A stretch of DNA of 62,966 bases, the filler included, from Corallochytrium limacisporum Hawaii (Eukaryota; Protista; Pluriformea): the NCBI GenBank assembly GCA_002811645.1. It is 5 parts of 5 records of this genome, joined end to end, with 100 filler letters (N's around TTAATTAATTAA, not from the genome) between each part and the next. Parts side by side here need not be neighbours in the genome. Positions count along the whole stretch, not along the records: positions 24,388 to 38,739 come from PDIP01000111.1; 4 more parts are not named here. One strand, 5' to 3'. Position numbers and translations under genes: made by a program. Every line of letters starts with the position of its first letter. Position 1 is the first letter of the stretch. Below, in pieces: positions 24,388 to 38,739 of the stretch. Under the pieces are notes generated by a model. It worked only from the letters and a program-made list of their open reading frames with translations. It had not been told where the DNA came from and ran no database searches.

Positions 24388-25272
24388 GGGGGGGGGTCAG
24401 GCCGGTGTCTGACTTGCGTTTGTTGGTTTTGTGCTCTGGGTGCACGTTACCTACCTTCCCCCCCCCCCTTTTTTTCCGGCCCGGCCGGCCCTCACCCTTT
24501 CTGTGTCATCCTCGAAAATGGGTCGTCGCACAGTCGAAGAAAAAAATGTTCTGGCGGAGGGTTCGCGTTCTGTTTGTATGTGCCCAGTTTTCTTTTGGGG
24601 TTTGAATGTCCTGTAACCACCAAACGTTGGCTGGTCACCCCACCACCTACTATTTTTTTGGCTCTCCCTACCTTCCGCTACCCTCCCGGACAGGGAGAGG
24701 GGGGGAGGGAGGGAGAGACTGCGGAGTGGTCGGTCGACTTGCCCCATTGACCTCAGTTGCTTACTGCAGCGAAACACCCGGAGTTGCCCTTACGCCCAGT
24801 ACTATGCTGAGCGGTGATGATACACAGGGGAGGCGGCACAGGTGGGATGGGAAGTATAGGGGCGGCGGTTGTTGCGAAGGTTGCACCCAAACCAACTGCG
24901 GCGATGGGAGGAAAGAAGAGGAACCGGGCACGAAGTGGGTCAGAAAGATCAGACGTAGTAGCACCGGGTGTGAGGAATCAATCGCACCCTTTTGTGTTGC
25001 TCACTGTCTTCGGGACCGAGCGAGAATGGTGTCGCTTGGTTTGCTGAATTGGCTTGTGAGAGGCCGTTTGCGTTGGCTACTTCAATGAAGCATGGGGTAA
25101 GGGACTGATCCATACGGAGGACTGATCCCTATGTAAAGGCTACACCGCACTCTCAAATCCAAGGTCGTCCACATGACATTTTCGAGCTAGAATCAAGGTT
25201 TTAACGAACCGAGTGGCCTCGGTGAGATCTAGTTCTTTTCTAAAGCTATAGATATATGATCAGCACCCAATC

Positions 25273-26904
25273 ATGAAAGTGGCTGTGGTTGGCGGTGGCA
25301 TGGCTGGCCTTGTGGCCGCATACCATCTGTCACAGTCCGACGACGTAGAAGTGACCATCTTTGAGAGGCAGAGCCGTCTGGGCTTGGGCGCTGCGCGGGT
25401 ACAGGTCCCTCTGACGGACGGTAAGGTCACAGATGTCGATATCCCTGCACGGGTCTTGGTTGTGGGGTACTACAATGAGCTTCTGGCGTTGTTCAAGCAC
25501 ATTGGCGTGGAGCTGCAGCCCTGTGATGTGGCTACATCCTACGGGGTTGGCTCCACGACTGACTTCTGTCACAAGAACATTCGCCTTGGGCGGTTTACCA
25601 TGCCCAATCCAATGGCCCTGAACGTCTTCAGTGCAAAATTCTGGAAGTACGCGAGTTGCTTTGTGCGGTTGAATATTGAAGGGGAGGCAGATCTGGCCAG
25701 CGGGCTATTCGACGAAGTTGAGAGGCCTCCAACTCTACATGAGTACCTGGATGCAGGCAGCTATCCTCAGGATTTCCGTGAGGAGGTGTTGTACCCAATG
25801 TTTGCTACAGTTTGTACATGCCCTCTTTCCTACATGTCCTCCTATCCAGCCAAGAACGTTCTCACGCTACTGACTTCCTTTAGCAGTCTCAAGCCTGACG
25901 CTCTGTACCGAACGAAGAATGGCATGGCGGACGTGATGCAGCGTCTGACTGCTAACGTCGACAGTGTTAACACTGGTGTGAGCATCGCCAAGTTGGAACC
26001 AAAGCAGAACGGTGGCGTGCGGGTCAGCTATTACAGGAACGGGCAGACTGACGATGTACAAATGCAGGAATTTGACCACGTGGTATTGGCCACTCAGGCT
26101 CCCCAGGCAGCTCAGCTGCTGCGCGAGATTGACCCAACCCTTGTGCAGTCCTTGGACGAGATTGAAACAATGACTAGTGAAGTCATTGTGCACCGGGATC
26201 AGAGCGTCATGCCCGTGAACAAGAGTCATTGGTGCCCCATGAACATCCGCAGAACTGTTGACGGGAGCGAGGCTATGATAACGGCCTACATGAATAGCCT
26301 GCAGCCGGAGCTTGCCGGTGAAGATCTCACCCTCGAGACTTGGAACCCTATTATTCAACCTGATCCCTCCAAGGTGCTTGGGCGGTTTCACTTCTGTCGC
26401 CCGCGCATCACCGCCCAACATAGTCGCCTTGCGGATGAGATTGGCCGACACCAGGGCCTGATGGACATCTGGGTCTGTGGTGCCTACAGCGTTGATGGCC
26501 TTGCTCTGCTCGAGGAATGCACTAGAAGCGCCTTGTTGGTGTCGACCGCCATTACCGGACGGGTGCCTGAATGGAAGCAGCACCGCATCGCAACCAAATT
26601 GAACAGCATTCCCATGAAGGCTAATCCCGTTGCCGTCGCCATCACTGACGTCAAGGACGTTGTCTACGGTATGATCGCCGTGGTCATTGGCCTTATGACC
26701 GGCTGGATAGTGCGTCTCATCCAAGTATGTTTCATCGGCAGCAGTGGTCAAACCTGGGCTGACCAGGCGCGCATCCAAGTGGCCGAGAGCGTGGAGCGAC
26801 GTCGCCACATGATTGCAACAACACCACTGAAGGCCGGAGCGTTGTATGAGAACGAGACTGAGGCCGTTGAAATCATAGGTGCCAAGATGATACCCGCTGG
26901 CTAA
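25273..26904 (+). CDS. FAD-dependent oxidoreductase, COG2907 / amine-oxidase-like, with a C-terminal TM segment
   Basis: Dinucleotide-binding KVAVVGGGMAGLVAAYHL..VTIFE..RLG, VDIP.R..GYY, FDHVVLATQA, VIVHRDQSVMP, QG..IWVCGAY..LLEEC. Confidence 0.85.
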   Translation: MKVAVVGGGMAGLVAAYHLSQSDDVEVTIFERQSRLGLGAARVQVPLTDGKVTDVDIPARVLVVGYYNELLALFKHIGVELQPCDVATSYGVGSTTDFCHKNIRLGRFTMPNPMALNVFSAKFWKYASCFVRLNIEGEADLASGLFDEVERPPTLHEYLDAGSYPQDFREEVLYPMFATVCTCPLSYMSSYPAKNVLTLLTSFSSLKPDALYRTKNGMADVMQRLTANVDSVNTGVSIAKLEPKQNGGVRVSYYRNGQTDDVQMQEFDHVVLATQAPQAAQLLREIDPTLVQSLDEIETMTSEVIVHRDQSVMPVNKSHWCPMNIRRTVDGSEAMITAYMNSLQPELAGEDLTLETWNPIIQPDPSKVLGRFHFCRPRITAQHSRLADEIGRHQGLMDIWVCGAYSVDGLALLEECTRSALLVSTAITGRVPEWKQHRIATKLNSIPMKANPVAVAITDVKDVVYGMIAVVIGLMTGWIVRLIQVCFIGSSGQTWADQARIQVAESVERRRHMIATTPLKAGALYENETEAVEIIGAKMIPAG

Positions 26905-27071
26905 ACATCCCACACACACAATAGTATCATACCGCGAACTCCCTCTATGTAGCGGTTCAGAAACAAGAAGTAGTAACATGCTCCTGAGCACTGTCAATCA
27001 AACCAGAAATAGACCAGCTTTACTCTTAGATGACATACAAAAACTTTTACTATGTAGACGACGAGGCTCTT

Positions 27072-28637
27072 CTATCCGCGCCGAGCGGGTGGCCGCTTGG
27101 CTGCCGGGAAGGTCAAGGGAACGCTGAGCTTGAAGACCAACTGACGCTTCGGTGTACCATCCCGCTTCGTGCTCACTGCACGTGGATCTATGCGATAGGA
27201 AATTCTGGCGCTGACGGCCTTAGCGATGGTTCGCACGCGTTGCAAACTAATTTGCAAATCCTTGACCAATGGAGTCGGCTCCACAACATAGTCGTTGACC
27301 ATCATGGATACCACGAAGATATAGCAGAGTAGACGATTGCGTAGAGCATCTGTAACGATGCGCTGGGGCGGTTGCCGACTGGAGTCAAGTATGGTGAACG
27401 TCTCAGTGAGATGATCGGCAAATGACTGAGGAACATTGCCCAAAGTCTGGGCTAGGTTAGCCAGCTTGCTTGGTCCCTTGAGAATGTAGAGCTGCATGAG
27501 GTAGTACAAGTACGCAATCCCAAGAGCCCGCTGGTTCTTGTGCTCACCAACGCGACCTTCCTTCATGATCTGCCCAATGAAGGTCGGCAACTCACCGTTC
27601 TCCATAAGTTTGTTGATATACTTTTCGTCAGTGCTGGTAAAGTCCCGAGTGAGAGGCCTGAGTGCCTCCAGGGCAGCAGTCGGCAGCATGTTGCTGAGTT
27701 TGTATGCCTCACCCATATCCTCGGTCTCTGCGTCGTGCGGTGGCAGATGCGGGTACAGTGGGTTGCCGCCCATTACCGAAGCCAACGATGCGGACTGCGT
27801 GAGCAACGCTCCTGTGTCATCCAGGCTGTCTCCGCCAATTGTGCTATTCAGGGTCTGCTCCAGTTTGACTTGGTGATCCTTGGCAAATTCACGCACAGTG
27901 GAGTGCATCTCCCGCAAACTTCCCTGAGCAACTCCATCGACATCCACACGGGCGCGGGCTCGTGCTTCGTATTGCTGTCGTTTCTTCTTGGCACCAAACT
28001 CGTCCACTAATGCCACACGGGCAGCAATCTGTCGCTCGGCCTCAGCCTGGTCCTTATCATCTACTGCCTCGTCACCCTCCCGCTCGATGCGTCCCTCGGC
28101 TTCAATGTCTGCCGCAGTGGTAACCGATTTCAAATGCTCGGGCAACGGAGTGAGTTGCAGGTTGTGCACATCTACGGGCTTGACACGCAACACAAGCTGT
28201 CCTTTGCCATTCCGTTCCACAGTTGCGATTGCACTCTTTCGCATATCCTCACCCACAGCAGCCCCTGAATAGTTCAGATTTTGTCCACTGTGATACAGAC
28301 GCAGCACGTCTTTGCCATCTCTGTCCCTTTGCTTTTCTGCTGACCAGTTTTCCCGAGAACTCTCATCGGCGATGGCAGAGAACAAACCATCCCCAAACTG
28401 GCATATATGGGAGATCTCACCGGAATTGCCAGATTTGATCACGTCAAACCCATTTTCCTTGGCCTCGATTTCTATCCGCAGGGCAGACTTACTAGTTGTC
28501 TTTGTGTGGCTAGAGCCATTGCTAGTTGTCTTCTCTACTACCTCGTCTGCCTTCCTCTTCCGCGAGGGAGACCTTGTAGTTTCCTTTGCTGAGGACCTGG
28601 AGGACCTTCGTTCCTTCTTGGACTTCTTTTCAGCCAT
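27072..28637 (-). CDS. POLR1E: RNA polymerase I subunit RPA49 / PAF53
   Basis: LVDEFGAKKKRQ, LPPHDAE..AYKLSNMLP, RLLCYIFVVSM..DLQIS, basic C-terminus LSVPLTFPAAKR. Confidence 0.8.
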   Translation of the reverse strand: MAEKKSKKERRSSRSSAKETTRSPSRKRKADEVVEKTTSNGSSHTKTTSKSALRIEIEAKENGFDVIKSGNSGEISHICQFGDGLFSAIADESSRENWSAEKQRDRDGKDVLRLYHSGQNLNYSGAAVGEDMRKSAIATVERNGKGQLVLRVKPVDVHNLQLTPLPEHLKSVTTAADIEAEGRIEREGDEAVDDKDQAEAERQIAARVALVDEFGAKKKRQQYEARARARVDVDGVAQGSLREMHSTVREFAKDHQVKLEQTLNSTIGGDSLDDTGALLTQSASLASVMGGNPLYPHLPPHDAETEDMGEAYKLSNMLPTAALEALRPLTRDFTSTDEKYINKLMENGELPTFIGQIMKEGRVGEHKNQRALGIAYLYYLMQLYILKGPSKLANLAQTLGNVPQSFADHLTETFTILDSSRQPPQRIVTDALRNRLLCYIFVVSMMVNDYVVEPTPLVKDLQISLQRVRTIAKAVSARISYRIDPRAVSTKRDGTPKRQLVFKLSVPLTFPAAKRPPARRG

Positions 28638-29294
28638 GGTGGTATATCACAAGAGCGCTAGTCAAAGCCACCTGCTGACGGGAAAGCCATGTTCTTAAAG
28701 ATCTGTTTCAACACACTGTCCTAAGCACCCTACACCTTTAGGATCCGTCTCATTTACCAGTATCACACCATTTTGACTCGCATGAGTAACTGCACAGGGA
28801 CTTTGAAATACCTGCAATCTCTTCCCAACCAGGTCATCCAAATGGCGAGTCGCGCTGTGCATGCGCGCGAGGGGTTCCTCCGGTGCGCGCAGACCCTCCT
28901 CACCTGCCCCCACCCACCCGCTGCCTTGCCCCCTCTCCCCTCCTCTTTCCACGCGGAAAACGGGAGACAGTCCCCCACTCACACACCTGTGGCCATCCCA
29001 GACATTAAAAAACTAATAATAGTTTTTTAACAGGACCTTCGGGGCGGCGTGCGGGGTTTGGTTCTCCAATGAAAATACGTCCCCCAGCTCTCCCTGGTAA
29101 GCACAGGGGTCCCGGGAAGAGTTTCCGGGAGAGTTGTGCACGTTTCGCTCTTCTTGAACCATGTTCTAGAACATAAGAGTGTGTCCAGTGCAGTTACTTC
29201 AACGCAATAGGATCCGACGTTGTTGTTTGTTTTTCAGGTCCGGACAAGAGTGTGTACGGTGACGTGGACAATCAGCCCAGAGCTTGGAGCAAAG

Positions 29295-30002
29295 ATGGAA
29301 CCACCACGGCAATCCGGGGTTGTGTCGCATCAACCGGGAGCGGCACCCCCACCGATGGGACCAAATCCAGGTAGCGGTACCGCCTCACCGGTGCCTCCAC
29401 CCCCTGTTGGAGGATCCTCCATGAGAGCGCAGCCGAGCGGACCTGCAATAAACGAACCCCCACCTAGCGGCCCCCCAACGTCAATAGGACAATCATTAGC
29501 AAATCGGGAACGCAAGACAAACTTGGCAGAAATTGACCCTACCGACTACGCAAATGTTCAGGCACGGTATACGGCACAGGAAGGACACTTAAATGGTTGG
29601 AATGATGTGCCCGTGGCAGTATTAATGCGGAAGCATGCGGCCACCCCCACCTCCGGCACTGAAAGTGAAGGCGGTGCAGACGACGACGGTGGAGACTTCC
29701 TGCAGGATCTGGACAAGCAAATCAAGGACTTCGAAGAAGCACAGGGAGCGAAAGTGAAAAAGCCATTGGCAGATGCCATTAAACGCCTTCGAGAAACCGT
29801 ACTCAAAGAAGGTGGGAACACCCAGAGTCTAAACCCTCACTTGTCCGGACAACTCCGCGAACTTACCGTAGTACTGCAGAAACGGGACTTTGCAGCTGCG
29901 GAGAAGATGCATTATGTCATGGTCAAGGCTCACGGCGTAGAAGTCAGCAGATGGCAGATGGCTTTGAAGCGGATCATCACGGAGATGAAGACAGCAGCCT
30001 GA
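29295..30002 (+). CDS. SRA1/Sec31 C-terminal-domain protein (steroid receptor RNA activator protein-like)
   Basis: Pro-rich N-terminus, GWNDVP (SRA1 GWNDPP), helical C-terminus DFAAAEKMH..H..EVSRWQMALKRII. First ATG is 29295. Confidence 0.7.
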   Translation: MEPPRQSGVVSHQPGAAPPPMGPNPGSGTASPVPPPPVGGSSMRAQPSGPAINEPPPSGPPTSIGQSLANRERKTNLAEIDPTDYANVQARYTAQEGHLNGWNDVPVAVLMRKHAATPTSGTESEGGADDDGGDFLQDLDKQIKDFEEAQGAKVKKPLADAIKRLRETVLKEGGNTQSLNPHLSGQLRELTVVLQKRDFAAAEKMHYVMVKAHGVEVSRWQMALKRIITEMKTAA

Positions 30003-30065
30003 GAACAGGTTCGTAGAATAGCTATAGTTCATAAAGAATGTTTCGAGTTTTTATTTTGTCATGAC

Positions 30066-32186
30066 TTACCCACCAGCATTTTCATCTATACTACTTTGTA
30101 GCCCACCCTTTGAGTGACCGTTGGCTAGGTCAACCTCACTATCAACCTGGCTCATGTCGCTTTTACCAAAGGTCATGCCGACGTCCTTGAGACTGTTGGC
30201 CGCCGCCTCCCCACGTATCTGTGCGGCCTTCTCACCGCTCTTGCTGATGTCCGCACTTGCGTGACGAAGCATGATGCTTCTACGAACACTCTGCTGTGGT
30301 GGCACTTCCATGTCTTCGGGATTGCCAAAGAAGAAGCCCGAGTATTGGATCAGAGATGTTACGAACTGATTTTGATATTTGATGTTGTAGATTGCAGCCA
30401 TGTTCTCACTGACCGGGCGCAGTAATGATGGACCAAAGACCACACCAAGATTAGACGCCTGCATGCGGTTGGTCTCCTCATGTGCAGCAATCTCATGCAA
30501 ATGTTCGCAAAGCAACTTCAAACCTTCGTACCGTTCGCTTGGGATGTCCTTGATCAACTGCTTGCACTCACGCATTCGATTTTCATAGTTATCAATCTTT
30601 GTGGCCGATAAAATTTGGTCGTAGAGAAAGAACGGTACGATCGGTGTCTCCAGGTCACGCAGATACTTGCGGACGGCAGATGAAGCCAGACGCCAACCTT
30701 CGTCCTCCTCTCCGAATTCCACTTTCTCCTTGGCGTATACCTTTGCCAAAGTCTCCTGCACCTTACCCTGCGCACCACTGACACGATAGATGCCCTCATG
30801 GTGTAATCCACACTCTGTAACGAGATTGATGAGCCGCTCCAGAACCATGGAGTCGAACGGCAGCACAGACTGGTCACCACTGACCGATCCGCGGCACGTT
30901 GTTGTTGAGGACTCTCGCGTGTGGCCGTAAGCCGAAAATCCATCTTTGCTACCACTTTCACCTTGGTTCATCATTTCGACCACCGTGACACTGCCGCTGC
31001 GGGCCGCCTTGGCCAATTTGCCGAGGTTGTTCTTCATCACATTGGTGATCTGGCTGTTATTCTTACTTTGTGGCTGCACAATGTCCGAAGAGATCTCAGA
31101 TTGTGACGTAAACATCTCTGACCAGATGTCATAGTCGACGCTACTCTGTGCCTGTACGACAAATCTCTGATCCTTGCCCGCGACCTCAAAGCAGAAGAGC
31201 CGATCCTTGTAGTCGCCAGAAAAAAAGTTGCATTGAGTCACTGTAAAAGTCTCCTTGCTAAATCCATATGAACCGGAAGTAGTGTAGATTGTGAACAGAC
31301 GGCTCTGTCGATCAAACTGACAGAACTGACGAGGCCAATTGATCAATGGACCCTTCCTGCGTTGAACCAAAAGGTAGCCACGCATTACCTTGTCCGACAG
31401 ACCAGGATGCGGGGTTTTCCGTTTCACGTATTCCCCGAGGGTTTTCTTCCGCAGAGCTGTCATCATCTCATCTTCTGTTTGATTGAGCGTGCGCATATCC
31501 TGCAGCCTTCCGTTAACGTAACCCATGAATGTCTCATATTCTTTAAACCATTCGAAAATTTGGTGGTGCGTGCTGCGTGCAATATAAATGGATGCCAGAA
31601 TCTTCTCAGGCAGCTCAAACTTGTTGACAGCATTGATGTGCATAAGCGACTGCAAGTGTTCAGTAGACTGTTTCACGTACACTAATTCCTCCTGGCCCTG
31701 TTGCCTGTCAGTCTCCTCTGTTCCCCGTTTCTTACTGTCCCGACAGTTCTTTTCCACTGCACTGGCATACCGTTCTGTATTGCTCTTAAATTTGGTGCGT
31801 GCGTCCCGTGCAGGCCTCAAAGATCTTTCCAGCAGATCCTCCAGGCCAGCCACTAAGAGTGTTTGCCTCTGTTCAACCATAAAGAGCTGCTGTGCCTCAA
31901 TGTCCCGGATCAGATTCGCAAGAAGTTGCAGGCTTTCGTCGATCAAGACCTCGTCTTCCGACTTTTCTCCCACAGCAGGGAACTTGATTGCGGCAATCAT
32001 GTCAGCTGCCTCCTCTCCAATCTTGCAGGCTTGTGCCTGGGCTTTATTCAAGTCACTGAATTTACGAGCAAGGCGTTTAACCTGCTGATACGTGTTCTCC
32101 AATGCCTCTTCATGCTCTCCCAAGTGTTCTTTGAAGAACGGACTGTCCAATAGACAGTCTGAAAACTCCAATGGTTGCAAACTCAT
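30066..32186 (-). CDS. BAR-PH-RhoGAP of the GRAF / oligophrenin (ARHGAP26/10/42) family, no SH3
   Basis: N-terminus MSLQPLEFSDCLLDSPFF typical of GRAF, PH domain (DRLFCFEV), RhoGAP GIYRVSG with arginine finger and NRMQASNLGVVFGPSLLRP. Confidence 0.93.
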   Translation of the reverse strand: MSLQPLEFSDCLLDSPFFKEHLGEHEEALENTYQQVKRLARKFSDLNKAQAQACKIGEEAADMIAAIKFPAVGEKSEDEVLIDESLQLLANLIRDIEAQQLFMVEQRQTLLVAGLEDLLERSLRPARDARTKFKSNTERYASAVEKNCRDSKKRGTEETDRQQGQEELVYVKQSTEHLQSLMHINAVNKFELPEKILASIYIARSTHHQIFEWFKEYETFMGYVNGRLQDMRTLNQTEDEMMTALRKKTLGEYVKRKTPHPGLSDKVMRGYLLVQRRKGPLINWPRQFCQFDRQSRLFTIYTTSGSYGFSKETFTVTQCNFFSGDYKDRLFCFEVAGKDQRFVVQAQSSVDYDIWSEMFTSQSEISSDIVQPQSKNNSQITNVMKNNLGKLAKAARSGSVTVVEMMNQGESGSKDGFSAYGHTRESSTTTCRGSVSGDQSVLPFDSMVLERLINLVTECGLHHEGIYRVSGAQGKVQETLAKVYAKEKVEFGEEDEGWRLASSAVRKYLRDLETPIVPFFLYDQILSATKIDNYENRMRECKQLIKDIPSERYEGLKLLCEHLHEIAAHEETNRMQASNLGVVFGPSLLRPVSENMAAIYNIKYQNQFVTSLIQYSGFFFGNPEDMEVPPQQSVRRSIMLRHASADISKSGEKAAQIRGEAAANSLKDVGMTFGKSDMSQVDSEVDLANGHSKGGLQSSIDENAGG

Positions 32187-33755
32187 GTTTTACAACTGTA
32201 TCGTGTGAATTCCAACCTGGTGCTCTCTGTACTTTACATGACTCGCAGGACAAACACTAAATACTTCATCCAATCCACTGGGCTTGCTAAGGCTTCGTTC
32301 CTTCTGTGCTATACGTGATCTACGTCCCACCTTCCAATAGCTAGCCCACTCATGCGCCATGATATCACTCACCAACACCAGGAGACGACACTTTGGACCC
32401 AAACACACAAGGGTCCTTAGGCAATCGTGTCGGTCACACTGCAATCGGGTCCCTGACATATTCATCGCTACCATCACATACTCGGTCGTCGCCCCGCAGC
32501 CCTGCCAATCGGAGGAGGCTCCCTCAATACTCTTTCCCCGCCCTTTTCATTGGTGGCAGGACAGAGAGGGGAGCGGGGGACTTCTTGACCGGTCACTTTG
32601 TGTGCGGCCGGCCCTCCCCGGGGCACAACCCCCTCCCCCGCGGGAGACCACAGCAACAGAAAAGTCTGCGCCGTGTCCGAACACCCCCCCCCCATCCCCG
32701 GTCTCCTCTCCTCGCTGGCTGCAACTTTCCCTTTCGGTCCCCACACTTTCCCTGGGCGGTTCTTTTCTTATTTGTTGCTCCGGGCTTATATTCGTCCATA
32801 CCGGTTCCTTCACCGGGGACACCCCCGCTCTTGTCTGCCTCAGTGTGCCGGTGTCTGCGGGCGCTAAGCGTTAGAAACCGTGTCATTGCGGGGCCACCGC
32901 TGGGTTGCTCTCATGCCCGCTCCCCTAGGAGAGAGCGAGTGCCAGAGAGACCCCAAGGAATTGCATGTGTGTGTCTGTGTGCCTTGGACGAACGATAAAG
33001 GAGGACTTCCCCTTGGCACCACCGTCGTCTGCGTCTGCGTACCCGTGCAAAGTCGTACTACGGCGGCCCGGCTCCCGTGCCTTGCGGTTCAATCTCCCTC
33101 CCTTTCTCATTAAGCAGCGGGTCCCCCGAGAGAGAGTCCGCGGCAGGCCTCCCCTCCGTTTCTTTGCGGTCCGTCAGCCATTCAACAGATCACTCCTCGG
33201 CAGCACCATTGGACCCTCGATAAAATAGACTCCCAAATTTCAAGGGCTGAAGCTTCCCCGCTCTACACACGCGCACTGTTCGGGCAGGTACAAAATGTAC
33301 TGAGCAGATTTCGGAGTCAGCGAGGACAGTTTTTGTTGTATACACTGTGAAACCAGTATATAAAATTCAACGCAACCGTGTTTCCCGTTCCCTTTTTCAA
33401 GTATGGGATGTACAGGTAAACAATTTGGTAGAGGCTAGTCGTGTTGTGGAGGCAGGGAGGCGAGTTACTACCGAAACGGTAGGGCCCATGAGCCGTAAGG
33501 TCCCGTGGTGGCTGCTGGCGCTTTGGTTGTGTCTGCAGCTTGGGTTGTGCAGGCTTTTGGCAGCACTCTAGCCAGGAGCATCAATCCTTCTACTACTTTC
33601 TGGTAGTCTATGAAATGCATATTGTCGCATATTAGAGTTTGTAATTTTAACAGCATATTTTTAGCGGAGGTATTTGATAGTCACGCAGGGTAGACATGGA
33701 CGAATGGGTGTTGGAGATCACGTATAGTTTGTTTGGAGTCACATTAGTTGCAATA

Positions 33756-34089
33756 ATGTCATTGGGAACAATTGCTTGGTTCGCCGCAGGTGGTGTTTTC
33801 ACGTCGATGTACGTGAACGGAATGCGTTACCTGCCTCTTTATGCATGTAAGTGTGTAATGTTGAATGGATAAAGGAAGTCTGGTCTTGATGTTTACTGAA
33901 TGTGATGTACTAACAATGTCAATGTTTGTGAATGTTTTACTCTCTTCCTTTACAGTCCCGGGTCGGACAGCAGTCTGCGGTGTCATTGGAACTGGGCTCG
34001 GTTTGCTCGCCCACAACTATGAAGAAGACGCAAAGGTCCGTATTGCTAAGCGCCGGGAGCGCCTACTTGAAAAGTACGGTGACCAGTAG
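33756..34089 (+). CDS. NDUFC2: Complex I accessory subunit B14.5b/NDUFC2-like, two exons (33756-33846, 33956-34089), 74 aa
   Basis: Splicing gives MSLGTIAWFAAGGVFTSMYVNGMRYLPLYAFPGRTAVCGVIGTGLGLLAHNYEEDAKVRIAKRRERLLEKYGDQ*. It has two TM segments, an N-x-x-R-x-LP motif and a charged tail, like plant/fungal B14.5b. The phase-1 intron restores the frame exactly. Confidence 0.75.
33847..33955 (+). other. Spliceosomal intron (109 nt)
   Basis: GTAAGT donor, perfect TACTAAC branch point at 33908-33914, pyrimidine tract and TACAG acceptor. Confidence 0.9.
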
Positions 34090-34642
34090 ACGGGCTGCAA
34101 AGATATCAAAAGTATTAAATATTGCGATTTCATCAGCTCATAGATCGACAAACTAGTTCAATGAAATAAATTAAAAAAAGATAACATATACAAAGAGATA
34201 TAAACTCACATCATTTCAATGTCCAGCCGATCCCCTTAGCACGAAAACTGGCCTGCACATGCAAAGTTTATTCCGTATGGCTGCCGTAGGTGATCTCTGC
34301 ATCGGACTTGTTGGGGACCCCATCTGAATGAGCCACCTGTTTCTGTGGCGGTCTCAAGGAGGGGCGGGCCCGTGCGAAACATTATTCGTGGCAAGGGGGT
34401 ACTAAAGAACACGGGCTAGCGGAGCTTTGATTCTGGCGTTCAGCATTATTTAGTGTATGCTTTCCCGTATCGTCGTTGAAGTTCGCGGAAGCCCCTTGGA
34501 CGTGTTTTGCTATTGCAATAAAGAATCGAAACCAAGTTGCGTACTTGGATCATACGTCGCTAGGTTGAGGGACATAGCCGATGTCTAGCGATAGAGCCTT
34601 GGAACATAAAGAAAGCCTATAGATAAGCAAGCCTAGCTCACA

Positions 34643-35560
34643 ATGCGTAAGCATCAAATGTCAGAAGAGGAGCGCCTTCAGATCGCGAAAGAACGGGAAG
34701 AGTGGATGAAAGAACATGAGGGTCATGAGTTGATGCATTTTGAGATCTTCTTGGTCATGCTTGGCACATTGGCTGGTGTCCAGATCGCTCTATTTCTGTG
34801 GCGGAAGTACCGGCCAAAAACTTACCAGCTGTTTACAACCTTCTGCATGTGGGCCTTTCCCATCTATTTTGCTTTCCAGCTTGAGCTTTGGCGCATGATT
34901 GAACTCTGGGGTGCGTACACGATTTTGAGTGCCTATGTCTATTATCGGGCACGGGAGAACCCCTTGCAGATGGGCACTCCGCGTCTGATATACAAATGGT
35001 TCTCCATTGCATACAAATTCACATATCTCCTGGCCATGGGGTCTTACTTCGCCTGTTTAATGGGTTTCCTCAGCAATGGAGCAATGGATGGCCCATGGTT
35101 CCAGTTTTTTGCCACCCTGCTCTTCTATGGTCTGTATTTTGGTATGCTTACTAGAGACTTTGCAGAGATAATTACGACAACCATTGCCAGTCGGCTAGGC
35201 TATGGAGGCACGGATCAGATGCCCAAGCGTGTAATGGTAGACGACAAGACCTGTGCCGTGTGTGGCCAAGAATTGGTTGGCGGTGAGGGGGAGGAAGAGC
35301 TGTTCGAACGCAAGATAACACTTGAGTGTGGTCACCGCTTCCACGAGTTTTGCATCCGTGGATGGACTGTTGTGGGCAAGAAGGAAACGTGTCCGTACTG
35401 CAAGGAGAAAGTGCAACTCAAGACCATGTTTCCGAACAACTGGGAGAAGCCAGATCTGTTCTATCTCCAAATGCTCGAGGTCCTTCGGTACTTGGTTGTG
35501 TGGCAACCCCTCATTCTGATCACTATGAATGTCATTGTCAGGTTCCTTGATCTGAAATAG
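34643..35560 (+). CDS. RNF121: RING-H2 membrane E3 ligase RNF121/RNF175
   Basis: HEGHELMHFEI, TPRLIYKWF, FYGLYFGMLTRDFAE, CAVCG..CGHRFHEFCIRGWTVVGKKETCPYCKEKV, LRYLVVWQP. Confidence 0.95.
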   Translation: MRKHQMSEEERLQIAKEREEWMKEHEGHELMHFEIFLVMLGTLAGVQIALFLWRKYRPKTYQLFTTFCMWAFPIYFAFQLELWRMIELWGAYTILSAYVYYRARENPLQMGTPRLIYKWFSIAYKFTYLLAMGSYFACLMGFLSNGAMDGPWFQFFATLLFYGLYFGMLTRDFAEIITTTIASRLGYGGTDQMPKRVMVDDKTCAVCGQELVGGEGEEELFERKITLECGHRFHEFCIRGWTVVGKKETCPYCKEKVQLKTMFPNNWEKPDLFYLQMLEVLRYLVVWQPLILITMNVIVRFLDLK

Positions 35561-35635
35561 AAAACTGTAGAATAGGATAATTACGAATGCTATTTTGTCT
35601 ATTCTTACATTGGAAGCTATGTCGTCCTCGTGACT

Positions 35636-38236
35636 TTAAGTCTTGGCTTTGGTAGCCGAGGAGGATTGACTGTTCTTTGAGGACGAAGCGGCCGCATGAG
35701 CATCACGCTTCGCATGAGCACGCATATGCTTGCGTAGGGACGAAGGATCAGTGTAGCGCTTGTCGCATCCGGGCCGCTCGCAAGGGTATGGCTTTCCACC
35801 GGTGTAGTTGCCATCCGAATCCACGTTTTCGTGTGTCTTCAGATGCTTACGAAGCGACGACGGGTCCGTGTAGGTTTTGTCGCAGCCAGATCTGTGGCAC
35901 TTGTACGGCTGTGCCTCCTGGTGCGTTCGCAGATGCTTTGTCCGATCCGACGAGTTGGAGTAGGTCTTATTACACTTCGGACATTTGTATGGGCGCTCGC
36001 CCTTATGAATTCGCATATGAGTCTTGAACGCCTCTTCCTTAGTAAATGTTTTGGGGCAGCGGTTGCATGCATACACCGTGTCACACGCGTGGCGCAGGAC
36101 ATGATTTAGCAGGCGACGATGGCTCTTGAAGACACTGTTTGCCTTGGAACATCCTTTCCACCGACAGCTGTACTTATTGTCCCTGCCTGGATGGACATGA
36201 CGCTTCTCCAAGTGGAGCGCCAAATCCACCTGAGACTTGATAATGGAGTCACATCCGGTCCATGGGCACTGGTATCCAGTGATGGTCTTTGAAGAGCTTT
36301 TCGTCTTTCGGCTCCCTGATGACGATTTACGGGCATCTTTGACGTTGTCACCCTTTTTGTCCTCTGCTTTCCTCTTCCTCTTATTGGTTGCGTCCTTGTC
36401 AGCAGGCTGTACCACTTGGTCGCTATCCCCAGTCATCATCTGAATGGATGGATCCCCAGGTGTTTGTGCACCACTCTCATTGATGCTTTCCGTCCCTGGC
36501 CTCGCCGAACTGGCTCCTGGTGCAGTGTCATTCTTATTGTTACTGTTGGTAAAGTTGTTAGATTGGAAGCCCGTGCTGGTGATCGCAGTGGTAGGCATGA
36601 CCAGACCAATGTCAGGCTGAGGCAATGGCTGCTGATTGGGTAACGCAGCATTCATGTCCGTACTGTTTATCGGCATGTACATTTTCGTTGCCATCATATT
36701 GTTGTGCGACTGGTTCGGTATGGATATTGTGGTAGTGGTGTTAGCAGTGGCCGCGTCACTATTGTCAACGGCGCCAGATGGGTTTCCTGTGATGCTGGTG
36801 TTGAAGTTCTGCGGACCAGCAATGATTCCGGCGCTCGATGTGCCCGCATTGTAGACCGCTCCTGGTATAGGGTTGAAAGCACTACTCTGATTAAACCCAG
36901 CTGTGGGTTTGCTCATGTCTGTTGTGCTAGTTGGATCTGTCAACGCTTGATTGCCACCAGCCATCTCCATGTTATTGAACTGCAATCGGCCAGTGGGATT
37001 GACTGCAACAACATTTGCACCCGCATGGGTGCTCACAAAGTTGTTCATTGTGCCTCCCATCATACCTGTGCTATTCATAATTTGATTATGTGGTTGTAGC
37101 ATGTAGAATACCAAATTGTTGTTCGCGTTCGGCCCGGCACCCGTCGAAGTGGCCATCACTGCGTTCGTTGCTTTTGCCAGATCAGTGGCTGGGGTTGCTC
37201 CGTACGTGGGCTGGGCCGTCATCATCGAGGAATCATGACTGATCAATGTGGTGGCTGGCACCAGTCCATTGTGGAGACCAGGCACGTAGTATTGCCCCAC
37301 ATTGGACATGTCAATCGCAGTACCATAGCCATAGCCTGGTAAGCCACCTGTGTAAACAGTGCTCAAGTTAGGCATCGTCGCCATGCTGTTCATGGTATTC
37401 CCGGGATTCATGGTATTCATACCAACCATACCGGTCATTGTGTTTGCCCACATTTTGTTCACGTTTGTGTTGGGTATGGTAGCGTTCCCAGCAGGCTTTA
37501 CTGTGGTACTACTTGCGTCCATCGCGTCCGTAACGGTATTCATGCCAGTCGCCGAAGCAGACGCTGACGACGTCGGCTTGTTTTCGAACTTGTCAGTACT
37601 GGTGTTGGTCTGATTGTTGCCATAATCAGGTTCCTTGCCACTCTTCGATCCCTGCTTATCCTGGTCAAGCGTAGAGGGTTCCTGGTTGTTCGCTGACGAA
37701 GTTGACGGCACAGCACTAGAATGTTGGGACGCGTCAGTAGCTGTCAATTGGTTCACACCCATGCCCGTCATGTACATATTGTTCATTGACATATTTTGGC
37801 CACCAGAAGCATCAGCAGTGCCAGTGGCTGGCATTGTGGCCACGCTGGTCATCTGATACGGCACAGAACCAATACCAAAGGTGCTGCCGTATATGCTGCC
37901 GGTAGAGTACGGATTCGCGCCTCCTGTAAAACTATTGGCCGGCCCGACGCCATAGAGTGGGTTAGCCATGTTGGCACCCACAATCTGTGTGCTCGATCCC
38001 GAAGTTGTCCCACCGGCATTGCTCTTGCTATAGTCCACGTACATGTTGTTCATTGCCATAGCATTTGCATAGGGGTTTCCAATTTTGGGGACTGCACTGT
38101 TTGTCGACAGATGAGGGGTATTGTTCATTGTGTTGTTAAGTGTAGTCATATTTGGCCCCGTCGTTCCCGTAGTAGACAAGTCGTAGACGACACCTGTGGT
38201 TTGAGCCGCCAGACCCGTCTTGCTGCTCTGTTGCAT
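35636..38236 (-). CDS. GLI/GLIS-like C2H2 zinc-finger transcription factor (six fingers) with a long N/M/T/G/S-rich low-complexity N-terminus
   Basis: Tandem CxWxxC fingers (CPWTGC, CRWKGC), HKGERPY linker, YSNSSDRTKH, and two YTDPSSLRKH fingers. First ATG is 38236. Confidence 0.88.
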   Translation of the reverse strand: MQQSSKTGLAAQTTGVVYDLSTTGTTGPNMTTLNNTMNNTPHLSTNSAVPKIGNPYANAMAMNNMYVDYSKSNAGGTTSGSSTQIVGANMANPLYGVGPANSFTGGANPYSTGSIYGSTFGIGSVPYQMTSVATMPATGTADASGGQNMSMNNMYMTGMGVNQLTATDASQHSSAVPSTSSANNQEPSTLDQDKQGSKSGKEPDYGNNQTNTSTDKFENKPTSSASASATGMNTVTDAMDASSTTVKPAGNATIPNTNVNKMWANTMTGMVGMNTMNPGNTMNSMATMPNLSTVYTGGLPGYGYGTAIDMSNVGQYYVPGLHNGLVPATTLISHDSSMMTAQPTYGATPATDLAKATNAVMATSTGAGPNANNNLVFYMLQPHNQIMNSTGMMGGTMNNFVSTHAGANVVAVNPTGRLQFNNMEMAGGNQALTDPTSTTDMSKPTAGFNQSSAFNPIPGAVYNAGTSSAGIIAGPQNFNTSITGNPSGAVDNSDAATANTTTTISIPNQSHNNMMATKMYMPINSTDMNAALPNQQPLPQPDIGLVMPTTAITSTGFQSNNFTNSNNKNDTAPGASSARPGTESINESGAQTPGDPSIQMMTGDSDQVVQPADKDATNKRKRKAEDKKGDNVKDARKSSSGSRKTKSSSKTITGYQCPWTGCDSIIKSQVDLALHLEKRHVHPGRDNKYSCRWKGCSKANSVFKSHRRLLNHVLRHACDTVYACNRCPKTFTKEEAFKTHMRIHKGERPYKCPKCNKTYSNSSDRTKHLRTHQEAQPYKCHRSGCDKTYTDPSSLRKHLKTHENVDSDGNYTGGKPYPCERPGCDKRYTDPSSLRKHMRAHAKRDAHAAASSSKNSQSSSATKAKT

Positions 38237-38671
38237 ATCTACAGCACGGTCGGACTGACCCACTACCTCAATTGAATGACCAGTTCCGGTTGATCCTGAA
38301 GACAGGTATCTACTTCGCAGTGTATAGACCCTGGACCCCAAGTCAAGGCCTACTTCTTGAAGCCCGACATGATACGTTTATCTCATTTGACTTTCTATCT
38401 ATAACGCTCTATCAGATACAGAACTGGAATTACTCGGACTCTCACGGCATGTCTCAAATACAGGACTGATCGTCAACTCCAACCGGATATTGTTCGGCAC
38501 CAATTCAGTCGTTCAAACAAGGAAATTCGGACCTAGATATTCACCTCGTACATAACAAAAGGAAACCATTCCAAAACGAACAAAAGGAAACTGAACCAAA
38601 ACGAGACGGAACGCTGGTCCCGAGGGCCACGGTCGGAACCAGTGAGGCCCTGGCCCCGTTTTCTTTCGCAC

Positions 38672-38739
38672 TACCACCCTCTGTCTGAGAATATTGTATC
38701 AAATCTACTCATTTTGATTTAGCTCTGCCGTCGCTTGGG
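38672..38739 (+). mobile_element. Terminus of a TA-flanked Tc1/mariner-like element (runs into contig end)
   Basis: TA-CCACCCTCTGTCTGAGAATATT...; 30 of the first 38 nt are identical to the terminus at 53484. Confidence 0.7.

What the first reader, a model, noticed from the sequence alone, without database searches (positions are those of the whole stretch)
35636..36275. GLI/GLIS-type zinc-finger array in an apparently non-animal genome
Seen: two CxWxxC fingers followed by YSNSSDRTKH and YTDPSSLRKH, the recognition helices of GLI/GLIS fingers 4 and 5. Known: the Gli/Glis/Zic family (including Hedgehog effectors) is generally treated as animal-specific, with fungal PacC/Zap1 sharing mainly the tandem CWCH2 motif. 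Inference: a pre-metazoan origin of the GLI/GLIS DNA-binding domain, or horizontal acquisition.
Basis: partly seen in the sequence, partly recalled or inferred. Interest (0 to 1): 0.8.

Follow-up and report, generated by a model that had tools for sequence, protein, structure and literature searches.

The report
GLI/GLIS-type zinc-finger gene in protist
A compact, intron-poor genome that looks like a single-celled relative of animals carries an intact gene whose DNA-binding domain matches finger for finger the GLI/GLIS/ZIC factors described so far only in animals, so this domain probably predates animals.

Summary
ORF 35636-38236 (minus strand, 866 aa from its ATG) ends in six C2H2 fingers. 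Fingers 1-5 align in one unbroken stretch with the human GLI1 five-finger domain (E 1.7e-34). They share the two CxWxxC fingers, the unusual C-x4-C-x15-H spacing of finger 2, and the finger-4 (YSNSSDRxKH) and finger-5 (YTDPSSLRKH) helices. Finger 6 is an old, conserved copy of finger 5.

Every named best database hit is an animal GLIS2, GLIS1/3 or GLI at 43-48% identity. The array is 46-47% identical to each animal subfamily compared, while GLIS2 is 58-59% identical to GLIS1/3 and to GLI. In trees it is a long branch outside every subfamily, and no placement tested is rejected.

The host is not an animal. Six neighbouring genes are intronless and tightly packed, and all four proteins looked up occur only in EukProt. 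The neighbouring RNF121-like gene falls on the holozoan side of a 99/99 split from fungi. The species was not identified.

There are no Hedgehog-regulation motifs and no similarity outside the fingers. The fungal 'Gli-like' families already described lack fingers 4 and 5.

My best reading is a vertically inherited, pre-metazoan member of the superfamily acting as a sequence-specific transcription factor. Ancient transfer from an animal is not excluded. Binding, expression and distribution in other protists are untested.

The parts
35636..38236 (-). Whole gene: uninterrupted 866-codon ORF plus stop. An in-frame TTG at 38341 would give 901 aa.
   Evidence: P0001 is the same protein as predicted in EukProt, a singleton cluster.
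36389..38236 (-). N-terminal ~616 residues of low complexity (about 13% T, 12% N, 10-11% each S, A and G, 7% M over residues 1-640). No domain found. Inferred to be a disordered activation or interaction region.
   Evidence: Composition and entropy. Pfam finds nothing here. No similarity to any retrieved GLI/GLIS protein, E > 4.
36287..36388 (-). Basic K/R/S-rich stretch (contains KRKRK) just upstream of finger 1. Inferred to be a nuclear localisation signal.
   Evidence: Sequence. The function is an inference.
36197..36268 (-). Finger 1, CxWxxC type, C-x4-C-x12-H-x4-H.
   Evidence: Same spacing as GLI1 finger 1.
36089..36166 (-). Finger 2, CxWxxC type, with the family's unusual C-x4-C-x15-H-x3-H spacing. 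Its helix differs from the animal FNARYK/FKAQYM consensus.
   Evidence: 27-42% identity to the compared groups.
36005..36067 (-). Finger 3, Cx2C, helix TKEEAFKTH instead of the animal SRLENLK(I/T)H. The preceding linker (ACDTVYA) has no identity to the animal TGEKPHK linker.
35921..35983 (-). Finger 4, Cx2C, helix YSNSSDRTKHLRTH. This is the finger most like GLIS2 (79% identity).
35831..35899 (-). Finger 5, helix YTDPSSLRKHLKTH. The YTDPSSLR-H positions are invariant in every GLI/GLIS sequence aligned.
35714..35782 (-). Finger 6, a second finger-5-type unit (YTDPSSLRKHMRAH), following a 16-residue non-canonical spacer.
   Evidence: 18 of 25 residues match finger 5 but only 65% of the DNA does. 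Within the YTDPSSLRKH block there are 6 synonymous and 0 amino-acid differences. The model folds it as a beta-beta-alpha unit, and pLDDT dips to 62-70 around the spacer.

Best explanation
This is a real, intact protein-coding gene of a compact, intron-poor, non-animal opisthokont, most likely a unicellular holozoan. It encodes a member of the Gli/Glis/Zic zinc-finger superfamily that cannot be assigned to any animal subfamily. Shown: the fingers align one-to-one with GLI fingers 1-5 and share the family-specific spacings and the finger-4 and finger-5 helices. Inferred: the protein enters the nucleus through the basic stretch upstream of finger 1. Inferred: fingers 4 and 5 read a GLI/GLIS-like G/C-rich core, as in the GLI1-DNA complex. 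Fingers 2 and 3 have different helices, so the flanking preference should differ from animal GLI/GLIS. Finger 6, on a flexible spacer, would add a second finger-5-type subsite. The long low-complexity N-terminal region would recruit the transcription machinery. It has no SUFU-binding, degron or PKA-type motifs, so it is not expected to be regulated the way Hedgehog effectors are. The simplest history is vertical descent from a five-finger gene that existed before animals.
For: Gene reality: the ORF runs 2.6 kb without a stop. Its GC3 of 0.58 lies within the neighbours' range of 0.52-0.64. Fingers 5 and 6 keep identical YTDPSSLRKH helices through 6 synonymous and 0 non-synonymous changes. Family: GLI1 (2gli) matches in a single stretch, E 1.7e-34, against ZIC3 1.6e-19 and AEBP2 about 1e-12. 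All named top hits that match as one five-finger array are animal GLIS2, GLIS1/3 or GLI at 43-48% identity. 41 columns are invariant, including both Trp residues and YTDPSSLR-H. The AF2 model has pLDDT 88 with six beta-beta-alpha units, and its best PDB match is 2gli_A at E 9e-12. Position: it is 46-47% identical to GLIS2, GLIS1/3 and GLI, while GLIS2 is 58-59% identical to GLIS1/3 and GLI. All four animal subfamilies stay together without it. Host: six intronless genes lie in 14 kb, with 75 bp between the convergent stop codons of this gene and its neighbour. The four proteins looked up occur only in EukProt. The RNF121-like neighbour's best named hits are vertebrates and choanoflagellates (41-47%), ahead of fungi (35-39%), and it sits on the holozoan side of a 99/99 split. 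Literature: Zic/Gli/Glis is listed as a metazoan family and no choanoflagellate member was found (PMC2837044, PMC2988786).
Against: The branch is very long (5.7-6.2 substitutions per site under the mixture model) and its attachment point moved between the two trees. AU tests do not reject grouping it with GLIS2 or with ZIC. No outgroup family (AEBP2, MIZF, Zap1, PacC, Fungl) was available as sequence, so the tree has no root. Only one non-animal genome is shown to carry the gene. The host species was not identified, and filastereans, ichthyosporeans and corallochytreans could not be labelled in the RNF121 tree. The helices of fingers 2 and 3 and the finger 2-3 linker, almost invariant in animals, are not conserved here.
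Confidence: 0.7

Rival explanations
1. The gene was acquired by ancient horizontal transfer from an animal into the protist lineage and then diverged rapidly.
For: Every named relative found is an animal protein. Finger 4 is 79% identical to GLIS2. A clade of this gene with GLIS2 is not rejected, AU p 0.28. Only one non-animal genome is shown to have it.
Against: It is not nested in any animal subfamily. It is equally distant from GLIS2, GLIS1/3 and GLI, at 46-47%. Its composition matches its neighbours, GC3 0.58 against 0.52-0.64. Nothing outside the fingers resembles an animal GLI/GLIS protein. Early fungi carry a weaker four-finger Gli-like form, which fits an older opisthokont root.
Confidence: 0.15
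2. The contig is animal DNA, either because the host is an animal or because the assembly is contaminated, so the gene is an ordinary divergent GLIS.
For: The closest named hits of both the zinc-finger gene and the RNF121-like neighbour include animals.
Against: Six consecutive genes of 260-866 codons have no introns, and intergenic gaps are as short as 75 bp. The four proteins looked up are in EukProt only, not in NCBI or UniRef. The RNF121-like protein is only about 44% identical to animal RNF121 and groups with choanoflagellates at 87/94. The BAR-PH-RhoGAP neighbour has almost no close relative among 5.8 billion proteins.
Confidence: 0.04
3. This is an independently evolved or generic C2H2 array that only resembles GLI/GLIS in two helices.
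For: Polydactyl zinc-finger proteins score higher in raw searches because many fingers add up. Fingers 1-3 are only 27-45% identical to the GLI/GLIS sequences compared.
Against: The match to GLI1 is one colinear stretch over all five fingers, whereas the generic zinc-finger hits are several overlapping partial stretches. Family-specific traits are shared: the tandem CxWxxC pair, the x15 spacing in finger 2, the H-V/I-H linker after finger 1, and the finger order.
Confidence: 0.03

Closest known systems
Animal GLIS2 (Drosophila homologue: sugarbabe) and GLIS1/3
   Same: Five colinear fingers. Tandem CxWxxC in fingers 1-2. Finger 3 is Cx2C, as in GLIS2. Finger 4 helix YSNSSDR-KH-RTH is 79% identical. 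Finger 5 carries YTDPSSLRKH. The finger 4-5 linker THQE..PY is similar. These are the best database hits at 43-48% identity.
   Different: The helices of fingers 2 and 3 differ, and the finger 2-3 linker shares no identity. Finger 4 is Cx2C instead of Cx4C. There is an extra sixth finger. The N-terminal region is unrelated. The host is not an animal.
GLI1/Ci, the Hedgehog effectors (PDB 2gli)
   Same: The array aligns over GLI residues 3-152 at 44% identity. 2gli is the best structural match. The finger-5 helix is the same.
   Different: No SYGH SUFU-binding motif, no DSGxxS degron and no RRxS/T sites. Finger 4 is of the GLIS type (SNSSDR, and without the extra residue of GLI's KHQNRTH).
Fungl-4ZF and Fungl (Fungus-Gli-like classes of Hatayama and Aruga 2010, PMC2837044)
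   Same: Non-animal opisthokont proteins with a tandem CWCH2 pair followed by canonical fingers. The last finger of Fungl-4ZF has SRSLRKH, reminiscent of finger 5.
   Different: In the published alignment Fungl shows one further finger and Fungl-4ZF two. None has the SNSSDR finger or the full YTDPSSLRKH helix. The window protein has all five fingers plus a sixth (compared by eye with the published alignment).
ZIC family (PDB 2rpc)
   Same: Same superfamily and finger order, with a related finger 5 (YTHPSSLRKH).
   Different: The match is weaker (E 1.6e-19 against 1.7e-34 for GLI1). ZIC has a long insertion in finger 1 and FANSSDRKKH in finger 4.

Membership tests
Gli/Glis/Zic superfamily zinc-finger domain | Five tandem C2H2 fingers colinear with GLI fingers 1-5 | tested here: met
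   Single alignment stretch, query 5-150 against 2gli 3-152, E 1.7e-34. Multiple alignment.
Gli/Glis/Zic superfamily zinc-finger domain | Tandem CWCH2: a Trp between the two Cys in both finger 1 and finger 2 | tested here: met
   CPWTGC and CRWKGC. Both Trp columns are invariant in the 28-row alignment.
Gli/Glis/Zic superfamily zinc-finger domain | Finger 2 with the extended C-x4-C-x15-H-x3-H spacing | tested here: met
   The spacing is the same as in all aligned GLI/GLIS rows, with no gaps across finger 2.
Gli/Glis/Zic superfamily zinc-finger domain | Finger 4 SN(S/A)SDRxKH helix and finger 5 Y(T)(D/H)PSSLRKH helix | tested here: met
   YSNSSDRTKH and YTDPSSLRKH.
Gli/Glis/Zic superfamily zinc-finger domain | Finger 2 (FNARYK/FKAQYM) and finger 3 (SRLENLK-H) helices and the TGEKP linker between them, nearly invariant in animals | tested here: not met
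   Finger 2 is 35-42% and finger 3 is 43-45% identical to the animal subfamilies; the 2-3 linker is 0%.
Gli/Glis/Zic superfamily zinc-finger domain | Nearest relatives in database searches belong to the family | tested here: met
   Once polydactyl multi-finger hits are set aside, the named hits in both searches are almost all labelled GLIS2, GLIS1/3 or GLI, and all that align across the array carry GLIS- or GLI-type finger-4/5 helices.
Gli/Glis/Zic superfamily zinc-finger domain | Binds the GLI/GLIS G/C-rich core site | not testable with these tools
   Inferred only from the conserved helices of fingers 4 and 5. A scan for GACCACCCA in the piece was at chance level.
A specific animal subfamily (GLIS2, GLIS1/3, GLI or ZIC) | Phylogenetic placement inside the subfamily | tested here: inconclusive
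   The sequence falls outside all four groups in both trees, but on a very long branch. Grouping with GLIS2 (p 0.28) or ZIC (p 0.18) is not rejected. The GLIS1/3 test did not finish.
GLI/Ci Hedgehog effectors | SUFU-binding SYGH motif, beta-TrCP degron DSGxxS, PKA site cluster, and conserved regions outside the fingers | tested here: not met
   None of the motifs is present. No similarity outside the fingers, E > 4.
Fungl / Fungl-4ZF (fungus Gli-like) | CWCH2 pair followed by only one (Fungl) or two (4ZF) fingers, with an SRSDAL-type finger 3 | tested here: not met
   The window protein has four further fingers with GLIS-type helices. Compared by eye with Additional file 7 of PMC2837044; no Fungl sequence could be fetched for a computed comparison.
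PacC / Zap1 | Their own finger number and helices; a Pfam Zap1_zf1 match across the domain | tested here: not met
   Only a 31.6-bit Zap1_zf1 hit on finger 2. No PacC or Zap1 chain appears among the 60 best PDB matches listed.

The most novel reading that the evidence does not exclude
The complete five-finger Gli/Glis/Zic DNA-binding domain, including the base-reading helices of fingers 4 and 5, arose in unicellular holozoans before animals and before Hedgehog signalling. It survives in at least one protist lineage as a Hedgehog-independent transcription factor that has added a sixth, finger-5-type finger.
Probability: 0.5. Interest if true: 0.65.

Novelty: new member of a known kind. Interest (0 to 1): 0.55.

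Why it matters
Gli, Glis and Zic factors are central to animal development, cilium-linked signalling and cell reprogramming. The papers I could read treat them as an animal invention, and a BLAST search of choanoflagellate genomes found none (PMC2837044, PMC2988786). A full five-finger member in a single-celled relative would move the origin of the domain before animals. That would parallel the recent report on Sox and POU factors (PMC11564870, seen only as its abstract). It would also offer a natural test of what this DNA-recognition code did before Hedgehog signalling existed. The claim is modest in scope: it concerns one gene in one genome, and its place in the tree is unresolved.

Tried and rejected
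- An exact look-up of the protein's contig found nothing on record.
- The search with the BAR-PH-RhoGAP neighbour gave two weak hits and no taxonomic signal.
- The ESM Atlas feature search returned only generic C2H2 clusters.
- A scan for the GLI site GACCACCCA (up to 1 mismatch) gave 4 matches against 4.5 expected.
- Rfam and tRNA scans of the piece were empty.
- Pfam found nothing in the small ORFs of the 32.2-34.6 kb gap or at 24606-25088.
- No Fungl, PacC, Zap1, AEBP2 or MIZF sequence could be obtained as a tool reference, so no outgroup-rooted tree was built. The comparison with Fungl rests on reading the published alignment.
- The Logan proteins P0006 and P0010, which carry repeated finger-5 units, were considered as possible protist relatives. 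I rejected this because they group with a spider GLIS2-type protein at 100/99.
- The AU test for a clade with GLIS1/3 did not finish in time.
- Literature searches for Glis or Gli together with Capsaspora, Corallochytrium, ichthyosporeans or filastereans found no report of such a gene. The library holds open-access papers only.
Full report
**Observation**

The piece 24388-38739 carries a minus-strand ORF at 35636..38341. It is 901 codons from a TTG and 866 from the ATG at 38236. The ATG version is identical to protein P0001 in the large protein collection. Its last ~210 residues hold six C2H2 fingers:
- Finger 1, CPWTGC..., 36197-36268.
- Finger 2, CRWKGC..., 36089-36166.
- Finger 3, Cx2C with helix TKEEAFKTH, 36005-36067.
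- Finger 4, Cx2C with YSNSSDRTKHLRTH, 35921-35983.
- Finger 5, YTDPSSLRKHLKTH, 35831-35899.
- Finger 6, YTDPSSLRKHMRAH, 35714-35782, after a 16-residue spacer.

**Is it GLI/GLIS-type?**

Against the PDB, polydactyl zinc-finger proteins score highest, but only as several overlapping partial stretches. GLI1 (2gli) matches in one colinear stretch covering all five fingers: query 5-150 against chain 3-152, E 1.7e-34. ZIC3 follows at 1.6e-19 and AEBP2 at about 1e-12.

I ran two searches of 5.8 billion proteins, one with the full-length protein restricted to the finger region and one with the finger domain alone. Apart from a handful of polydactyl proteins, the named hits are almost all labelled GLIS2, GLIS1/3 or GLI. 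Identity is 43-48% over the five fingers.

In a 28-row alignment, 41 columns are invariant. They include both Trp residues of the tandem CxWxxC pair, N-SDR-KH in finger 4 and YTDPSSLR-H in finger 5. The unusual C-x4-C-x15-H spacing of finger 2 is shared.

An AlphaFold2 model built on that alignment has mean pLDDT 88 and six beta-beta-alpha units. Confidence dips only in the spacer before finger 6. Its best match among solved structures is 2gli_A, at E 9e-12 and 44% identity.

**Differences from the animal proteins**

- The finger 2 helix (FNARYK or FKAQYM in animals) and the finger 3 helix (SRLENLK-H) are almost invariant in animals but are replaced here.
- The finger 2-3 linker shares no residue with TGEKPHK.
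- Finger 4 is Cx2C rather than Cx4C.

| Segment | Identity to the animal subfamilies |
|---|---|
| Fingers 1-3 | 31-45% |
| Finger 4 | 79% to GLIS2 |
| Finger 5 | 69-74% |

Nothing outside the fingers resembles any retrieved GLI/GLIS protein, E > 4. The SUFU-binding SYGH motif, the DSGxxS degron, the PxDLS motif and RRxS/T sites are all absent. So the protein is a member of the finger superfamily. It is not a Hedgehog-type GLI.

**Finger 6**

Fingers 5 and 6 share 18 of 25 residues but only 65% of their DNA. Within the ten codons for YTDPSSLRKH there are six synonymous differences and no amino-acid difference. The duplication is therefore old, and both copies have been kept under selection. 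This also argues that the gene is functional.

A parallel amplification of finger 5 occurs in proteins P0006 and P0010. These group with a spider GLIS2-type protein, so they are animal.

**Position in the family**

Over fingers 1-5 the window protein is 46-47% identical to GLIS2, GLIS1/3 and GLI alike. GLIS2 is 58-59% identical to GLIS1/3 and to GLI.

I built maximum-likelihood trees under LG+C20+F+G4, first with GLIS2, GLIS1/3 and one GLI. I then added true ZIC and GLI sequences translated from metagenome loci L003-L011. All four animal groups stay intact without the window protein:

| Group | Support (UFboot / SH-aLRT) |
|---|---|
| GLIS2 | 76/89 |
| GLIS1/3 | 85/88 |
| GLI | 99/77 |
| ZIC | 100/100 |

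The window protein is a very long branch of 5.7-6.2 substitutions per site. It attaches to the backbone at a different point in each tree. AU tests do not reject a clade with GLIS2 (p 0.28) or with ZIC (p 0.18). The best tree pairs it with GLI at 87/82. The test with GLIS1/3 did not finish. I had no outgroup sequences, so the tree is unrooted. The honest statement is that it is a superfamily member outside the recognised subfamilies, with its position unresolved.

**The host**

Six neighbouring genes are all uninterrupted ORFs:
- FAD amine oxidase, 25273-26904.
- RPA49-like, 27072-28637.
- SRA1-like, 29220-30002.
- BAR-PH-RhoGAP, 30066-32186.
- RNF121-like transmembrane RING protein, 34643-35560.
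- The zinc-finger gene itself.

Only 75 bp separate the convergent stop codons of the last two. The four proteins looked up occur only in EukProt, three of them as singleton clusters.

An exhaustive search with the RNF121-like protein, followed by naming of the top 20 representatives, gave this order:

| Group | Identity |
|---|---|
| Vertebrate RNF121/RNF175, a rotifer, and three choanoflagellates (Didymoeca, Monosiga, Stephanoeca) | 41-47% |
| Glomeromycete and chytrid-type fungi | 35-39% |

In a tree, the protein falls on the holozoan side of a 99/99 split from fungi and sits next to the choanoflagellates at 87/94. The gene's GC3 of 0.58 matches the neighbours' range of 0.52-0.64.

The genome is therefore not an animal's and is most likely that of a unicellular holozoan. 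Published genome descriptions single out Corallochytrium and Chromosphaera as compact and intron-reduced holozoans (PMC5560861). That fits, but the species was not identified here.

**What is already known**

- Hatayama and Aruga 2010 list Zic/Gli/Glis as a metazoan family. They describe Fungl and Fungl-4ZF as the nearest fungal classes.
- In their published alignment, Fungl shows one finger after the CWCH2 pair and Fungl-4ZF shows two. None has the SNSSDR finger or the full YTDPSSLRKH helix. The window protein is much more complete.
- Layden et al. 2010 found no gli/glis/nkl/zic candidate in choanoflagellates.
- Yasuoka et al. 2019 note that glis1/3 is missing from Monosiga.
- My searches of the open-access library found no report of such a gene in filastereans, ichthyosporeans or Corallochytrium.

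**Mechanism**

- Inferred, not shown: nuclear import through the basic stretch at residues 617-650.
- Inferred: sequence-specific DNA binding dominated by fingers 4 and 5, whose helices are conserved. From my own knowledge of the GLI1-DNA complex, these two fingers make most of the base contacts.
- Inferred: altered flanking preference from the changed fingers 2 and 3.
- Inferred: an added finger-5-type subsite read by finger 6 on a flexible spacer.
- Inferred: transcriptional output through the ~616-residue N/T/S/A/G/M-rich low-complexity region.
- A scan of the piece for GLI sites was at chance level.

**Verdict**

This is a real GLI/GLIS/ZIC-superfamily finger array in a non-animal genome, most simply explained by an origin before animals. 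Ancient transfer from an animal remains possible, at about 15%. It is a new member of a known kind with a variant sixth finger, and of moderate interest.

Noticed in passing
window 24388-38739: The piece is very gene-dense. Six ORFs of 260-866 codons have no introns, and the convergent stop codons of the RNF121-like gene and the zinc-finger gene lie 75 bp apart. This is typical of a streamlined protist genome.
   Followed up: partly
window 30066-32186 (-): A 706-aa BAR-PH-RhoGAP protein (GRAF/oligophrenin-like architecture) without a C-terminal SH3 domain. It has almost no close relative: only two hits among 8000 scored candidates, the better one a Logan BAR-PH-RhoGAP-SH3 protein at 25% identity.
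   Followed up: partly
window 34643-35560 (+): An RNF121/RNF175-like multi-pass membrane RING protein of 305 aa. It is 41-47% identical to vertebrate and choanoflagellate RNF121 and was used here as the host marker.
   Followed up: yes
window 27072-28637 (-), 29220-30002 (+) and 25273-26904 (+): Three further genes. An RPA49-like Pol I subunit has a ~180-residue basic/serine-rich N-terminal extension. A 260-aa proline-rich protein has a weak SRA1/Sec31-type C-terminal domain (E 1e-6). A 543-aa FAD amine-oxidase-like protein has a hydrophobic stretch near its C-terminus.
   Followed up: no
window 32200-34640: A 2.4-kb stretch with no long ORF. It has a GC-rich segment (58% at 32388-33387) and short ORFs with hydrophobic stretches at 33696-34089 (+), which may be exons of a small spliced membrane-protein gene. 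Pfam finds nothing.
   Followed up: partly
L001:1084-2001 and L002:1061-1978 (ENA metagenome contigs; protein P0151): A short (305 aa) GLIS-type five-finger protein whose fingers 3 and 4 are both Cx2C, as in the window protein. It lies on a GC 40% contig with three further long uninterrupted ORFs, one with a Trefoil domain. It is 61% identical to Lingula GLIS2 and 44% to the window protein. The organism is unknown and could be another intron-poor eukaryote.
   Followed up: partly
P0006 and P0010 (Logan; sample ERR14875861 for P0006); P0025: These ~505-aa proteins carry GLIS-type fingers 1-5 followed by four or five further YTDPSSLR(K/V)H fingers. They group with a spider GLIS2-type protein (100/99). 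This is a parallel amplification of finger 5 inside animals.
   Followed up: partly
L004:153-3740: A metagenome contig (ERZ1738542) holds an uninterrupted 1196-codon open frame with a true GLI-type finger array (FKAQYMLVVH, FTNASDRAKHQNRTH). A GLI gene with no introns over 3.6 kb is unusual. The organism is unknown.
   Followed up: no
P0014 (Coryphaenoides rupestris, 935 aa): This gene model carries the GLI finger array twice, at residues 185-340 and 638-760, with identical sequences. It is probably an assembly or annotation duplication.
   Followed up: no
window 24388-24396: The piece begins with a run of nine G residues, possibly a contig-end or sequencing artefact.
   Followed up: no
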